DNA of 64,000 bases from Guillardia theta CCMP2712 (Eukaryota; Protista; Cryptophyta). Positions 50,740-53,700 of this stretch are shown here, one piece after another. The translations under genes and the position numbers were made by a program. The DNA lies in NCBI RefSeq assembly GCF_000315625.1, contig NW_005434600.1:294748-358747 (forward strand), written 5' to 3'. The notes below the pieces were generated by a model. That model did not search any database, had not been told where the DNA came from, and saw nothing but the letters and a program-made list of their open reading frames with translations. Each line of letters opens with the position of its first letter. The first letter of the stretch is position 1.

Positions 50740-53700
50740 ATGCCAGCGAACGAGCTCATGCGTCTCCTCTGTTTGTGCATCATTGCGCAGGGTTGCTCCA
50801 CCATGGGGAGGCGATGCTGCACCGTCAGGAGTCAGGGGGGGCAAAGGGGCATGGGAACTTTCCTCCGGCATGGAGCGGGGAAGAAAGTGAAGGGAATACT
50901 GGCCTTGCGAGGAGGGAAGGAGTACTCGGACTTCAGTGAATCGTTCCAGAGCAGCCTGGAGGAGAGGATCGACCCACACGAGCTCGACCAGCTCCTCACG
51001 GACCACCTGCTGTTCATCGATGAGGACAAGGCAGAAACTGTAGCAATGAGGGAGGGAGTGCAGAAGGAGAAGAACAAGGAGGAGGAGATACCGGTGCTGC
51101 CCTCTGATGAGTTCAAGGCAGGAAAGATGGAGGAAGAGGGAGGGGTCTTGCGTCCTCTGACAGAACGAGGGCTCCTCACCATCGAGCAGCATGAAGACGA
51201 CGGCATGTGGCACTTGCACTGGACCTCCCGCGTACCGAATCGAGCCTCCGTCGGTAAGCTAGACATCCTCCTCCTCTCCGGCGACGGCTGGATCGAGAGG
51301 CTGATGGACTGGAAGGGAGAGCCTGTGACTGGAGCGAGGATCTACCGAGTCGGGCTGAACTCAACCGGGAGGGTGTACTACTTCTGGATGCAGGAAGCGT
51401 CGATCGAGGTGGACGACGTGCTGTTCAACCGTGTCGATCATATTCTCAACCCTCCCACCTACAACGAGAGCTTGGAGGGATTCGGATGGCGTTGGACCTC
51501 TCATCTCAACATCAGCTTGTCTCAGGGGCTGCACAAGGCGCTTGTTGGCGTGCGGGATGCAAATTTAGAGCTCCCCAACGTCCCAGCAGCGCATGACGAG
51601 CAGTGGAGGAGGGTTTCAGAAGTTCAGTCGCACAAGTACCGCCAACACTGGATCGTCTATAACCGAATGCATCCTCCTCAACAGGCCCAGGACAAGGTGG
51701 CGACTCCCCGGCTGATCCCCATGGGAGGCAAGCACCCCCGCTTCTGGGAGAAGGACGGGGCAACCAGGATCACGCACTGGGACCCGATCTCTATCACCTG
51801 CCCGACCCCAGGAGCAGAGATCTACTACACCTTCTGGCCCAGCATAGACTACTACTGGAATGTAGAGGATGCGGACGAGACCCCTTGCGAGCTGTCGTGG
51901 GAGAAGTACCAGGGGCCGTTCTCGCTACCGTTGCCTTACTTCTTCGAGGAGAAAGGATATGAGGACTGGAGGGTCAAGGCGGTGGCTGTGAAAGAGGGGA
52001 TGACTCGCAGCGATGTCGTAGCAGGGGAGTTTGCTGTGGTGACACATAAGGAGGACCTGCCCAAGGTCAGGTATGACGTGCACATGCGGTTACGACACGT
52101 GCTGGAGAACTCTTCGCACCCGCTCTTCATCGAGTACGACATGAGGATTCGGAGAGCGTGCTATGCGAGAAAGAAGCACTGGGAGGCACAGTTGGAGAAG
52201 CATGCGAGCGGCGAGATCAACGAGTTTACGGAGCAGGTGAAGGGAGGAGAAGGGAGGAGAAGGGATGAAGTGGTTGGTAGCTAGAAATGAAGGAGAGAAT
52301 GAGAGGAGGAGGAGAGAGAAGAAAACAAGAAGGCGGATGAAAGACATGATGCTTGCTGTGTCGTGACAGCAGGAGAAGCAAAAGCACAGGCAGAAGCAGG
52401 AGTAGGAAGAGAGCGAGGAGGGGAGATGAATGGGGTCGAAATCCTGTGACAGTCTTCGATTGCTCAGTTTCTACCCCTGGAAGGATTCCTGCACTTCAAT
52501 CGCCGTGGAAAACTTTCACATCAGACCAAGGAAAACGATCCTGCGTTGCCTCCGGTGAAACTTCCCTCCTCCCCTCCTCCCCCTCTCAACCAACCTCCAG
52601 CTTCCCTCCTTCCTTATATCTCCTTCCCTTAGCTCACAAACCTTTCTCTCCCCCTTCCCTCCACGTACTCCTCCCTCTGTCCCTCGATCCTCCTTCTTCC
52701 GCCTTTCCCTCTCACTCGTTTTGTTCAATCTCCATCTCCCCTGTTTCCGCCTCCTTGTCTGTCTCCTCCGCTTCCTTCTCCTCCCTCTTCCGCCTGCTCC
52801 TCCTGCTCAACCCAACGCAGGGTGCTGTCTGCTTCGATGATATCACTGGGGTGCCTCTGAACAATCAAGGATTTCCTGTTGGCCCTCCCACAGGCAGGCG
52901 GAGGAAGGCAAAGGCAAGAGAAGTAGCCAAACCAGGGGGAGGAGGAGGAGGAGGAGGAGGAGGAGGAGGAGGAGGAGGAGGAGGAGGAGGAGGAGGAGGA
53001 GGAGGAGAATCGAAATCGTCAGAGAGAGCAATGGGGGCAGGGGCTGAGCAAGAACTTGAAGAATCTACTTTGACAAACATGCAACAGGTTGACTTGACTG
53101 TTTGCATTAGGCTAAGTCAGTAACTTGTTGCAGGTTATAAAAGACAAGGTTGTGACATGATGTTTCGTACATTCTTTGTTTTTTCCTGTCATTTCTTTTT
53201 TCTCGGAACTTCTCTTTTTCTTTTCATCTCCTCTTTTTTGTTTGCATTTGTTCCTGTTTGTAGTGGTTGTTCTCTCAATGATTGAATCCTGTTTTCACTG
53301 CTCAATCTTTTGCTCTGTGTGCAGGAAAGCAAGATCATGTCGGAAATGAAGAGAGATGTCTCGTCGATGATGACAGGTTTTCCAGCCTTTCCTGCTCTCA
53401 CGTCCTGTCGCGATGACACATGGATTGTAGATGATAATGAGAGACAAACTGCTTCTGTTGAGGTGAGCAAGAAATGTACAAGACTGCATTGAAATGATAG
53501 ATTGTAACATCGTCGAAGGATAGAAAGGATGATGGAGAAGGAGAGTGGGAGGGAAGAGGAGGGAGGAGCAGGCAGCAGGAAGGAAGAGAAGGAGAGGAAG
53601 AGAAGGAATTTGGGGGACGGGGGGAATGAGTAGGAGGACGAGAAGAGGACGAGGAGGAAGGAGTTTGGAGGACAAAGACAAGGAGGAAGCAGGGGAAGGA

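What the first reader, a model, noticed from the sequence alone, without database searches (positions are those of the whole stretch)
50740..52284. Signal peptide + LRGG + Rpn13 Pru domain + Fn3-associated domain: unusual ubiquitin-receptor fusion
Seen: a hydrophobic N-terminus (LLCLCIIAQG), a basic transit-like stretch ending LALRGG (ubiquitin C-terminus mimic), a Pru-like domain, then a CHB_HEX_C/Fn3-associated domain with no recognisable DEUBAD in this exon. Known: Rpn13 is a cytosolic/nuclear proteasome ubiquitin receptor, and complex plastids have a periplastid compartment with its own ubiquitin-related machinery. Inference: a periplastid-targeted, repurposed ubiquitin receptor with a novel architecture.
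Basis: partly seen in the sequence, partly recalled or inferred. Interest (0 to 1): 0.7.

Follow-up and report, generated by a model that had tools for sequence, protein, structure and literature searches.

The report
Periplastid Rpn13-like ubiquitin receptor, Guillardia
This expressed gene of the alga Guillardia theta encodes a proteasome-type ubiquitin receptor (Rpn13 Pru domain) that carries an import leader and an extra beta-sandwich domain, so it is most likely the ubiquitin receptor of the second proteasome kept in the remnant cytoplasm around the plastid.

Summary
Window 50740-52284 is GUITHDRAFT_114343 of Guillardia theta. It has a hydrophobic N-terminus and a basic, acid-free stretch ending in LALRGG. 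It has a true Rpn13 Pru domain (Pfam E 1.6e-13; predicted fold matches human Rpn13 Pru at TM 0.81). It also has a divergent but real Fn3_assoc/CHB_HEX_C_1 beta-sandwich.

New here:
- Spliced RNA contigs start 122 nt upstream of the ATG, so the leader is transcribed.
- They splice at 52236 into two further exons, so the annotated C-terminus is wrong and the protein is longer than 514 aa.
- Three environmental ortholog lineages share the architecture. Each has a signal-like start and a leader ending in L-x-L-R-G-[GA], while the rest of the leader is unalignable.
- One ortholog has a DEUBAD exon downstream. The family is therefore an elaborated Rpn13, not a repurposed one.
- G. theta has two other Rpn13-like genes, both without a leader.

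Best reading (about 0.5): this is the Rpn13 of the known periplastid 26S proteasome. Targeting and binding are inferred, not shown.

The scan has already flagged the LRGG-ended leader many times on other DNA of this genome. I found no paper describing it. I class the finding as a new variant of a known kind, of moderate interest.

The parts
50620..50739 (+). 5' UTR. It lies downstream of an AG acceptor at 50618-50619 and holds two tiny uORFs (ATG 50677 and ATG 50691).
   Evidence: RNA contigs of runs X1 and X2 lie from 50618. X1 carries 16 unmatched letters before that point, which suggests an upstream UTR exon. An in-frame stop at 50692-50694 excludes an N-terminal extension.
50740..50793 (+). 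Signal-peptide-like start, aa 1-18 (MPANELMR + LLCLCIIA + QG). The predicted cut is after A-Q-G, which leaves Cys as the first leader residue.
   Evidence: Highest Kyte-Doolittle 9-mer of the whole protein, 2.63 at aa 9. All three ortholog lineages also start with a hydrophobic segment. No SignalP was available.
50794..50916 (+). Transit-peptide-like stretch, aa 19-59. It is basic and acid-free and ends in LALRGG (50899-50916).
   Evidence: 10 K/R and 0 D/E in aa 21-60, then 6 D/E in the next 20 aa. L-x-L-R-G-[GA] is kept at the same boundary in L005, L066 and L069.
50917..51108 (+). Acidic, predicted helical N-terminal region of the mature protein, aa 60-123.
   Evidence: AF2 predicts helices at aa 61-76 and 79-109 with pLDDT 50-70. 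The orthologs share an L-[ST]-[DE]-R-x-[VL]-R-R-V helix here.
51109..51417 (+). Rpn13-type Pru domain (PH-like fold), aa 124-226. It has a family-specific 5-residue insertion (WKGEP) before the position of human C88.
51472..51741 (+). Linker conserved within the family (GW.W.SH...GLH motif), aa 245-334. It is mostly low confidence in the model.
   Evidence: Conserved against L005. pLDDT is below 50 for aa 255-315. No Pfam hit.
51742..52047 (+). Divergent Fn3_assoc/CHB_HEX_C_1-type beta-sandwich, aa 335-436. It has a longer insert between the two conserved motifs than the bacterial repeats have.
52048..52236 (+). Two long helices, aa 437-489, and the end of exon 1 (...EFTEQ).
   Evidence: AF2 model mbcab44ca590e. 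Conserved in L066, which also ends the exon in ...EYTEQ (E 4e-15).
52237..52467 (+). Intron 1 (GT..AG, 231 nt).
   Evidence: The joint is seen in RNA contigs X1 and X2 and is absent from DNA run X11.
52468..52554 (+). Coding exon 2 (29 codons, in frame).
   Evidence: frame read.
52555..52820 (+). Intron 2 (GT..AG).
   Evidence: The loose ends of the X1 and X2 contigs after 52555 match the window from 52821.
52821..53123 (+). Coding exon 3. It holds the conserved motif PPGA..FD..T.VPL...GFPVG, then a basic stretch, a poly-Gly run encoded by (GGA)n, and an open frame to the stop at 53121-53123. Its true 3' end is unknown.
   Evidence: RNA contigs reach about 52960 and stop in the repeat. The motif is shared with L066 (E 3e-6). 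The ORF is listed.

Best explanation
This is an expressed nuclear gene of Guillardia theta for an Rpn13-type ubiquitin receptor that is imported into the periplastid compartment (PPC), the remnant cytoplasm of the red-algal endosymbiont. Proposed route: the signal peptide takes it into the ER lumen around the plastid. The basic transit-like stretch takes it across the next membrane. Its first residue is not aromatic or Leu, so it stays in the PPC. The leader is then removed at or near the conserved L-x-L-R-G-G end. In the PPC the Pru domain would dock on the regulatory particle of the largely nucleomorph-encoded 26S proteasome and capture ubiquitin chains, as Rpn13 does in the cytosol. The Fn3_assoc-type beta-sandwich and the helical hairpin are a lineage-specific insertion in what is a flexible linker in canonical Rpn13. 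Its role is unknown; a protein- or glycan-binding adaptor is my guess. Shown here: gene, transcript, splice sites, domains, folds, orthologs, conservation of the leader's end. Inferred: targeting, cleavage, ubiquitin binding and proteasome binding.
For: - The Pru domain is supported by sequence and by fold.
- The transcript covers the leader and is spliced.
- The leader has the signal + basic transit-like form, and Cys follows the likeliest A-x-G cut. PMC3101018 states that PPC proteins carry such a bipartite signal whose first transit residue is not aromatic or Leu.
- Three ortholog lineages (L005/L004, L066-68, L069-71) share the whole architecture, a hydrophobic start, and an L-x-L-R-G-[GA] leader end just before an acidic mature part. 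In shuffles of each leader, LRG[GA] appears with P = 0.026, 0.047 and 0.039.
- Ortholog L069 has a DEUBAD exon downstream on the same strand: Pfam RPN13_C E 5e-7, and E 7e-6 against an HMM I built from 28 canonical DEUBADs.
- The other two Pru genes of G. theta (C91, C172) start without any leader (MVEFRCGKM..., MAAAE|ARAGKM...), so this is the only leader-bearing Pru gene.
- The G. theta nucleomorph encodes 21 proteasome subunits, and a 26S proteasome in the PPC is reported (PMC3514955, PMC6559170).
- Several contact residues are kept, in human numbering. Rpn2 contacts M31, P40, W108, Q110 and E111 are identical; V38, V85 and V93 are conservatively replaced. Ubiquitin contact D79 is identical; L56 becomes M, F76 becomes L, F98 becomes L. 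The alignment is; the residue lists are from PMC5494190 and PMC11546751.
Against: - No localisation, binding or processing data exist.
- No signal-peptide predictor was available.
- No DEUBAD was found in G. theta itself, neither in the window from 50 to 64 kb nor in the whole genome. The 3' end of the gene is unresolved because of a (GGA)n run and assembly gaps.
- I found no leader-bearing or second copy of the partners. There is one nuclear Rpn2 (C11, with a canonical PPPPEPFEYTD tail), one Rpn1-like locus and one leaderless UCH37. A PPC docking site would have to be nucleomorph-encoded or unrecognised.
- Several Rpn2-contact positions differ (T37V, T39R, L33E, V95R, R104V, C88V, P112A). A 5-residue insertion also sits in the beta6-beta7 loop that lines the Rpn2 groove.
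Confidence: 0.5

Rival explanations
1. It is a PPC-resident ubiquitin-binding adaptor that does not sit on the proteasome. For example, it could handle ubiquitinated pre-proteins leaving the SELMA translocon, or link ubiquitin signals to another PPC structure such as starch or membranes through the beta-sandwich.
For: The leader evidence is the same as above. The Rpn2 groove is altered by a 5-residue insertion and several changed contacts. No PPC-type Rpn2 or UCH37 was found in the nuclear genome. No DEUBAD was found in G. theta. Ubiquitination in the PPC is also used for import (PMC12412216).
Against: An ortholog keeps a DEUBAD, the Uch37-binding module typical of proteasomal Rpn13. W108, M31 and P40, which are central to Rpn2 docking, are kept (PMC5494190). 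A PPC 26S proteasome exists and needs receptors (PMC6559170).
Confidence: 0.2
2. The leader sends the protein somewhere other than the PPC: the ER or secretory route, the cell surface, the plastid stroma or the nucleomorph. The bacterial-type CHB_HEX_C_1 domain would then point to an extracellular or lumenal role.
For: CHB_HEX_C_1/Fn3_assoc domains are mostly found in secreted bacterial proteins. Signal-peptide and cleavage-site calls rest here on hydropathy only.
Against: A 40-residue basic, acid-free stretch after the hydrophobic core is typical of transit-like parts, not of plain secreted proteins. The first residue after the likeliest cut is Cys, not aromatic (the PMC3101018 rule). A Pru domain, and in one ortholog a DEUBAD, makes sense only where ubiquitin exists. 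Fn3_assoc domains also occur in intracellular eukaryotic proteins, namely chordate DZANK1 clusters.
Confidence: 0.12
3. It is a degenerate Pru relic. The domain keeps the fold but has lost ubiquitin and proteasome binding, and the protein now does something unrelated.
For: Identity to canonical Pru is only about 28%. Three of the four tested ubiquitin-contact residues are replaced (L56M, F76L, F98L). The complex prediction gave no answer, which is not evidence either way.
Against: The replacements are conservative and D79 is kept. The FWMQE core and the architecture are conserved across lineages at 44-50% identity, which argues for selection. The gene is well expressed: spliced contigs occur in runs from five studies.
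Confidence: 0.1

Closest known systems
Rpn13/ADRM1, proteasomal ubiquitin receptor (human and mouse; structures 2R2Y, 5V1Y/5V1Z, 5IRS)
   Same: N-terminal Pru domain with the same PH-like fold (TM 0.81). The FWMQE core is kept, as are W108, M31, P40 and D79. A Gly-rich low-complexity linker is present. In ortholog L069 a C-terminal DEUBAD is present.
   Different: It carries a signal + transit-like leader ending in LALRGG and a 60-residue acidic helical N-extension. The beta6-beta7 loop has a 5-residue insertion. About 250 extra residues (conserved linker, Fn3_assoc-type beta-sandwich, helical hairpin) sit between the Pru domain and the Gly-rich region. No DEUBAD was detected in G. theta itself.
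The two canonical Rpn13-like genes of G. theta (contigs C91 and C172)
   Same: Pru domain. C172 also shows weak DEUBAD pieces.
   Different: They are intron-rich, have no leader, have no insertion in the Pru domain and have no Fn3_assoc module. They are presumably the host cytosolic copies. The host Rpn2 (C11) ends in the canonical docking motif.
Yeast Rpn13 (Pru domain only, 156 aa; structure 2Z4D)
   Same: It shows that a Pru domain without a DEUBAD can still serve as a proteasomal receptor. It was matched by fold at E 1.4e-3.
   Different: The yeast protein has no extra domains and no targeting leader.
Fn3_assoc/CHB_HEX_C_1 domains (PF13287/PF13290) of bacterial glycosidases and surface proteins, and of chordate DZANK1
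   Same: Two motifs (..SI.C.TPGA.IYYT.. and ..[IV]KA[IV]A.K.GM..S.[IV]....F..) and the beta-sandwich fold.
   Different: It is a single copy with a roughly 45-residue insert between the motifs. It scores below Pfam's cut-offs. It is fused to a Pru domain, an architecture I did not meet in any hit of these searches.
Periplastid protein-turnover machinery of diatoms (PMC3101018)
   Same: Nuclear genes with a bipartite leader encode ubiquitin/proteasome parts for the PPC.
   Different: In Phaeodactylum only some 20S subunits, and no 19S factor, were found in a PPC version. A PPC Rpn13 would be specific to nucleomorph-bearing cryptophytes.

Membership tests
Rpn13/ADRM1 proteasomal ubiquitin receptor | Pru domain (PF04683) above Pfam's gathering score | tested here: met
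   51.4 bits against 25, E 1.6e-13, aa 124-226. The ortholog scores 59.1 bits.
Rpn13/ADRM1 proteasomal ubiquitin receptor | PH-like Pru fold that superposes on solved Rpn13 Pru structures | tested here: met
   AF2 pLDDT above 90 over the domain. Foldseek 5v1z_B E 3.8e-8, TM 0.81, rmsd 2.9 A. The top 11 hits are all Rpn13 Pru.
Rpn13/ADRM1 proteasomal ubiquitin receptor | Ubiquitin-contact residues (S55, L56, I75, F76, D79, F98 of mouse Rpn13; PMC11546751) | tested here: inconclusive
   By the alignment: G, M, L, L, D, L. D79 is identical and the hydrophobic residues are conservatively replaced. No binding test was possible.
Rpn13/ADRM1 proteasomal ubiquitin receptor | Rpn2-docking surface (M31, V38, P40, V85, V93, W108, Q110, E111, C88, P112 and others; PMC5494190, PMC11546751) | tested here: inconclusive
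   M31, P40, W108, Q110 and E111 are identical. V38L, V85L and V93I are conservative. T37V, T39R, L33E, V95R, R104V, C88V and P112A are changed (P112 is kept as P in L005 and L011/L007). A 5-residue insertion lies in the beta6-beta7 loop.
Rpn13/ADRM1 proteasomal ubiquitin receptor | C-terminal DEUBAD / RPN13_C (PF16550) that binds Uch37 | tested here: inconclusive
   Not found in the window from 50 to 64 kb or in the G. theta genome. The gene's 3' end is unresolved. It is found downstream in ortholog L069-71 (Pfam E 5e-7, 30.3 bits for a single exon; custom HMM E 7e-6).
Rpn13/ADRM1 proteasomal ubiquitin receptor | Physical association with the 19S regulatory particle | not testable with these tools
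   Needs co-purification or complexome profiling.
Fn3_assoc / CHB_HEX_C_1 (PF13287 / PF13290) | Score above Pfam's gathering cut-off | tested here: not met
   18.2 against 23 bits and 16.9 against 22 bits, with only aa 350-364 aligned. I therefore describe it as a divergent relative, not as a Pfam member.
Fn3_assoc / CHB_HEX_C_1 (PF13287 / PF13290) | Significant sequence similarity to bona fide members, over both halves of the domain | tested here: met
   phmmer against 1.84 billion representatives: P0013 E 4.4e-8, P0015, P0017 and P0019. Pfam was run on P0013, P0015 and P0019, and all three are multi-repeat CHB_HEX_C_1/Fn3_assoc proteins. Matches fall on aa 349-365 and aa 411-434.
Fn3_assoc / CHB_HEX_C_1 (PF13287 / PF13290) | Same beta-sandwich fold | tested here: met
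   All 10 ESM-Atlas shape neighbours carry PF13287 and/or PF13290 (TM by query 0.46-0.54). The best VIA hits are 8ayr_B (Z 7.7) and 6q63_A (Z 6.9). A Z below 8 is on its own only a common fold. Foldseek against the PDB gave nothing below E 1e-3.
Periplastid-compartment proteins with a bipartite targeting signal (cryptophyte/diatom type) | N-terminal signal peptide | tested here: inconclusive
   An 8-10 residue hydrophobic core after a short n-region, with A-Q-G at positions -3 to -1. The same kind of start occurs in three ortholog lineages. No trained predictor was available.
Periplastid-compartment proteins with a bipartite targeting signal (cryptophyte/diatom type) | Transit-peptide-like part whose first residue is not aromatic or Leu (PMC3101018) | tested here: met
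   The stretch has 10 K/R and no D/E. Cys follows the likeliest cut; Thr, Pro or Ala, and Arg do so in the orthologs. This depends on the predicted cleavage site.
Periplastid-compartment proteins with a bipartite targeting signal (cryptophyte/diatom type) | Leader ends in a ubiquitin-tail-like (L-x-)L-R-G-G. This is a lead from the scan's earlier notes, not a published criterion. | tested here: met
   LALRGG here, LQLRGG in L005 and L066, LRLRGA in L069, always at the basic-to-acidic boundary. A genome-wide count of LRLRGG-coding patterns gave 353 against 140-322 for controls, which is only a weak excess.
Periplastid-compartment proteins with a bipartite targeting signal (cryptophyte/diatom type) | Localisation in the PPC shown in vivo | not testable with these tools
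   Needs a GFP fusion, immunogold labelling or fraction proteomics.

The most novel reading that the evidence does not exclude
The L-x-L-R-G-G end of the leader is a true ubiquitin/NEDD8-tail mimic (LALRGG is, from my own knowledge, identical to the last six residues of NEDD8). A ubiquitin-type protease in the periplastid compartment would cut it, so that leader removal there is done by the ubiquitin system itself. This receptor, with its extra Fn3_assoc module, would be a cryptophyte-specific adaptor that ties the periplastid proteasome to another periplastid structure, such as starch, membranes or the import machinery.
Probability: 0.15. Interest if true: 0.8.

Novelty: new variant of a known kind. 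Interest (0 to 1): 0.5.

Why it matters
Cryptophytes are the only red-lineage algae reported to keep a whole 26S proteasome in the remnant endosymbiont cytoplasm, and most of its non-ATPase subunits have not been identified. This gene would be its first candidate ubiquitin receptor. That would make it testable whether ubiquitin in that compartment serves degradation as well as import.

The Pru + Fn3_assoc architecture is a domain combination that none of my searches met elsewhere. The family also adds an independent, cross-lineage case of the LRGG-ended leader, a candidate processing site for periplastid proteins that I could not find in the literature. The corrected gene model (two extra exons and a wrong annotated C-terminus) is of practical use to anyone who clones the gene.

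Tried and rejected
- Complex prediction of the Pru domain (aa 116-243) with G. theta ubiquitin (L063:1495-1722): verdict 'no answer', score 0.00. This is no evidence either way.
- DEUBAD in G. theta: nothing from Pfam PF16550 over the genome (where the control also rang nowhere), tblastn with P0003 and L069 pieces, a custom DEUBAD HMM on six-frame pieces of window 50-64 kb, or the L069 DEUBAD exon against the genome (best E 0.03).
- A candidate fourth exon at 53324-53462 (good AG acceptor and GTGAGC donor) could encode the first DEUBAD helix. The resemblance is too weak to claim.
- Two further homologous-protein searches (aa 40-250 as a piece, and region 116-245) returned only P0002 or the protein itself. 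I therefore had no named relatives and attempted no phylogeny, so a red-algal origin was not tested.
- PPC partners: no second Rpn2 or Rpn1 (the C165 hit at E 0.0096 looks spurious). The single UCH37 has no leader, and neither do the other UCH genes.
- LRGG in the window: 10 six-frame hits against 6.2 expected, and only this one has a signal-like context.
- Genome-wide LRLRGG pattern count: only a weak excess.
- Foldseek against the PDB with the C-terminal model: nothing below E 1e-3.
- Literature: no paper in the held library has Rpn13 + nucleomorph, GUITHDRAFT_114343, or LRGG + Guillardia. Curtis et al. 2012 and Stork et al. 2012 are not held, so I could not check whether their predicted PPC proteomes already list this gene.
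- The spliced (joined) protein model was not sent to any search tool. The exons were searched separately by reference.
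Full report
**What is there**

The window is nuclear DNA of the cryptophyte Guillardia theta CCMP2712 (G000 contig C74). The ORF at 50740..52284 (+), 514 aa, is 98% identical to the annotated hypothetical protein GUITHDRAFT_114343 (P0001, 510 aa). The two differ only in the last residues.

- Residues 7-19 are the most hydrophobic stretch of the protein.
- Residues 21-60 hold 10 K/R and no D/E and end in LALRGG. An acidic stretch follows.
- Pfam finds Rpn13_ADRM1_Pru at aa 124-226 (E 1.6e-13, 51.4 bits against a cut-off of 25).
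- phmmer finds the solved ADRM1 Pru domains at E about 1e-7.
- Fn3_assoc and CHB_HEX_C_1 score below Pfam's cut-offs, and only aa 350-364 align.

**Folds**

An AF2 model of aa 60-499 was built on a 32-row alignment (A2). It gives pLDDT above 90 for the Pru domain. Its top 11 Foldseek hits are all Rpn13 Pru structures (5v1z_B E 3.8e-8, TM 0.81, rmsd 2.9 A).

A separate model of aa 316-499 (pLDDT 80) shows a beta-sandwich (aa 324-434) followed by two long helices (aa 437-489). Foldseek against the PDB gave nothing below E 1e-3 for it. Other evidence identifies the domain:
- The exhaustive VIA search put two glycosidase accessory domains first among the rows with real identity (8ayr_B Z 7.7, 24% id; 6q63_A Z 6.9, 21% id).
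- All ten nearest shapes in the ESM Atlas are families carrying PF13287 and/or PF13290, including the intracellular chordate protein DZANK1.
- By sequence, an exhaustive phmmer search with aa 245-499 found true multi-repeat CHB_HEX_C_1/Fn3_assoc proteins (P0013 E 4.4e-8). The matches fall on both conserved halves of the domain (aa 349-365 and 411-434).

The domain is therefore a real but divergent relative of this family. It fails Pfam's own threshold.

**Transcript and gene model**

Contigs of two runs (X1, X2) lie from 50618, which is 122 nt upstream of the ATG. They skip 52237-52467 (GT..AG) and resume at 52468. They leave the window sequence again after 52555 and continue with letters that match the window from 52821. 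The DNA run X11 is collinear throughout. The skipped introns show that X1 and X2 are RNA-derived.

This has four consequences:
- The presequence is transcribed. An in-frame stop at 50692-50694 rules out a longer N-terminus.
- Exon 1 ends at 52236 (...EFTEQ). The last 15 codons of the ORF are intronic.
- The annotated terminal exon of P0001 is not the one used in these runs.
- The protein continues through exon 2 (52468-52554, 29 codons) into exon 3 (from 52821). Exon 3 is open to 53123 and runs into a (GGA)n-encoded poly-Gly tract, where the RNA contigs break.

Exon 3 starts with a motif, PPGA..FD..T.VPL...GFPVG, that a marine ortholog shares (E 3e-6). This supports exon 3 as coding. The true 3' end is unknown, because repeats and assembly gaps (N from about 54331) follow. 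I did not send the joined model to any search tool. The exons were searched separately by reference (no Pfam family in exon 2, exon 3 or the linker).

**Relatives**

The family is small. There were 17 hits in 1.84 billion representatives, mostly short environmental fragments sharing WWEPGGATRVTHWDPISITC.TPGA.IYY. Contigs of three further lineages give the whole context:
- L004/L005.
- L066-L068, marine, from ERZ907921 and two other ENA assemblies.
- L069-L071, with 71% GC.

L011, L007 and L006 are a further set of frame-shifted copies.

All have the same order: Pru, conserved linker, beta-sandwich, helical exon ending in ..E[FY]TEQ or ..ERTQQ, GFP motif, Gly-rich tract. In L069 a MoeA-like neighbour matches the window at 24.5-26.8 kb. 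This loose linkage fits a cryptophyte relative.

In L069-71, about 1.5 kb downstream on the same strand and behind the Gly-rich tract, an exon matches the DEUBAD core. Pfam RPN13_C gives E 5e-7 (30.3 bits, profile positions 57-95). An HMM I built from 28 canonical Rpn13 C-termini gives E 7e-6. The family is thus an Rpn13 with a module inserted into its linker. In G. theta itself and in L066 I found no DEUBAD.

**The leader and LRGG**

Each ortholog starts with a hydrophobic segment and then a mostly basic stretch:

| Source | Hydrophobic start | End of leader, then next residues |
|---|---|---|
| G. theta | LLCLCIIA | LALRGG, KEYSD |
| L005 | MAVLAAIGVVL | LQLRGG, EPESED |
| L066 | MRDVLMVLIGVVAAAA | LQLRGG, SDGD |
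| L069 | ATVIGATLTLAVASISAGALVA | LRLRGA, GDEEG |

In L005 a GT..AG intron that I infer from the DNA splits the leader.

BLAST aligns nothing else before the Pru domain. In 20,000 shuffles of each ortholog's pre-Pru region, LRG[GA] appears with P = 0.026, 0.047 and 0.039. This does not count the extra Leu or the fixed position. The motif is therefore under selection.

After I had seen this, the scan's notebook showed that about 60 earlier notes on this genome describe the same 'signal peptide + linker + (LR)LRGG' leader on unrelated proteins thought to go to the periplastid compartment. Those are unchecked AI notes. My own support is the cross-lineage conservation in this family and a weak genome-wide excess of LRLRGG-coding patterns (353 against 140, 255 and 322 for controls). 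I found no paper that mentions it.

By the published rule, PPC proteins carry a signal peptide plus a transit-like part whose first residue is not aromatic or Leu (PMC3101018). The likeliest A-Q-G|C cut fits this rule, but no trained predictor was available.

**Genomic background**

G. theta has two other Pru loci. C91 starts MVEFRCGKM... and C172 starts MAAAE|ARAGKM.... Both are intron-rich and have no leader. C172 has weak DEUBAD pieces. The single clear Rpn2 (C11) ends in PPPPEPFEYTD. This is the counterpart of the proline-rich C-terminal hRpn2 segment (940-953, with F948 and Y950) that docks on hRpn13 (PMC5494190). I found one Rpn1-like locus, one UCH37 without a leader, and no second copy of either.

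The G. theta nucleomorph encodes 21 proteasome subunit genes, and a 26S proteasome in the PPC is reported. Some Rpn subunits may hide among nucleomorph ORFans (PMC3514955, PMC6559170). In diatoms no 19S factor was found in a PPC version (PMC3101018).

**Function**

Mapped on human Rpn13 by the alignment:
- Rpn2-contact residues M31, P40, W108, Q110 and E111 are identical.
- V38, V85 and V93 are conservatively replaced.
- T37, T39, L33, V95, R104, C88 and P112 differ (residue lists from PMC5494190 and PMC11546751).
- A family-specific 5-residue insertion lies in the beta6-beta7 loop.
- Of the ubiquitin-contact residues, D79 is kept, while L56, F76 and F98 become M, L and L.

This pattern is compatible with ubiquitin and Rpn2-type binding but does not prove either. 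The complex prediction with ubiquitin gave no answer.

My best explanation (confidence about 0.5) is a PPC-imported Rpn13 that serves the periplastid 26S proteasome, with a lineage-specific beta-sandwich and helical insert of unknown role. The rivals are:
- a PPC ubiquitin adaptor that works off the proteasome (0.2);
- another destination in the secretory or plastid route (0.12);
- a Pru relic without ubiquitin binding (0.1).

**Novelty and score**

The Pru domain, the PPC proteasome and bipartite leaders are all known. Four things are new: the Pru + Fn3_assoc architecture, the identification of a candidate PPC ubiquitin receptor, the corrected gene model, and one more conserved instance of the LRGG-ended leader. 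The scan has already reported that leader many times on other DNA of this genome. I rate the finding a new variant of a known kind, with interest 0.5.

Noticed in passing
window 52237-53123: The public model GUITHDRAFT_114343 (P0001) ends in a short exon (…QEKQKHRQKQE) that the RNA contigs do not use. They splice 52236 to 52468 and 52554 to 52821 instead, so the annotated C-terminus is probably wrong.
   Followed up: partly
window 50618-50739: The 5' UTR holds two tiny uORFs (ATG 50677, MKGRR-stop; ATG 50691, MNCA-stop). The X1 contig carries 16 unmatched letters just before an AG at 50618-50619, which suggests a 5' UTR intron and an upstream exon.
   Followed up: no
window 50835 (G-run 50835-50841): The contig of DNA run X11 lacks one G of a 7-G run inside the leader-coding part. 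The RNA contigs X1 and X2 agree with the window. This is probably a homopolymer error in the 2011 run, not an allele.
   Followed up: no
window 50200-50400, 52940-53010, 53870-54130, 54331 onward: Microsatellites flank the gene and enter it: (GAGCAG)n/(GTGCAG)n upstream, (GGA)n encoding poly-Gly in exon 3, and (CTCCT)n downstream. Assembly gaps (runs of N) follow, which may hide the 3' exons.
   Followed up: no
G000 contigs C91 (L002) and C172 (L003): G. theta has two leaderless, intron-rich canonical Rpn13-like genes, not one. Whether both are expressed, or one is a pseudogene, was not checked.
   Followed up: partly
window about 24560-26760 and L069:5937-8082: A MoeA/gephyrin-like (molybdopterin biosynthesis) gene lies next to the ortholog in L069 and about 25 kb from the gene in G. 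theta. This is loose conserved linkage between the two organisms.
   Followed up: no
L058 (G000:C11:377739-380867): The single clear nuclear Rpn2 ends in …EEEEPPPPEPFEYTD, a near-perfect copy of the human Rpn13-docking peptide.
   Followed up: partly
L011, L007, L006: These metagenome copies of the ortholog show the coding frame shifting twice within what is one exon in G. theta. Short introns or assembly errors could explain this, and I did not resolve it.
   Followed up: no
window 52821-52880; L066:5790-5860; L069:3745-3780: A short motif after the helical hairpin (VPL..[MQ]GFPVG in G. theta and L066; FGFPCDG in L069) is conserved across lineages and matches no Pfam family. It may be a short linear binding motif.
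   Followed up: partly
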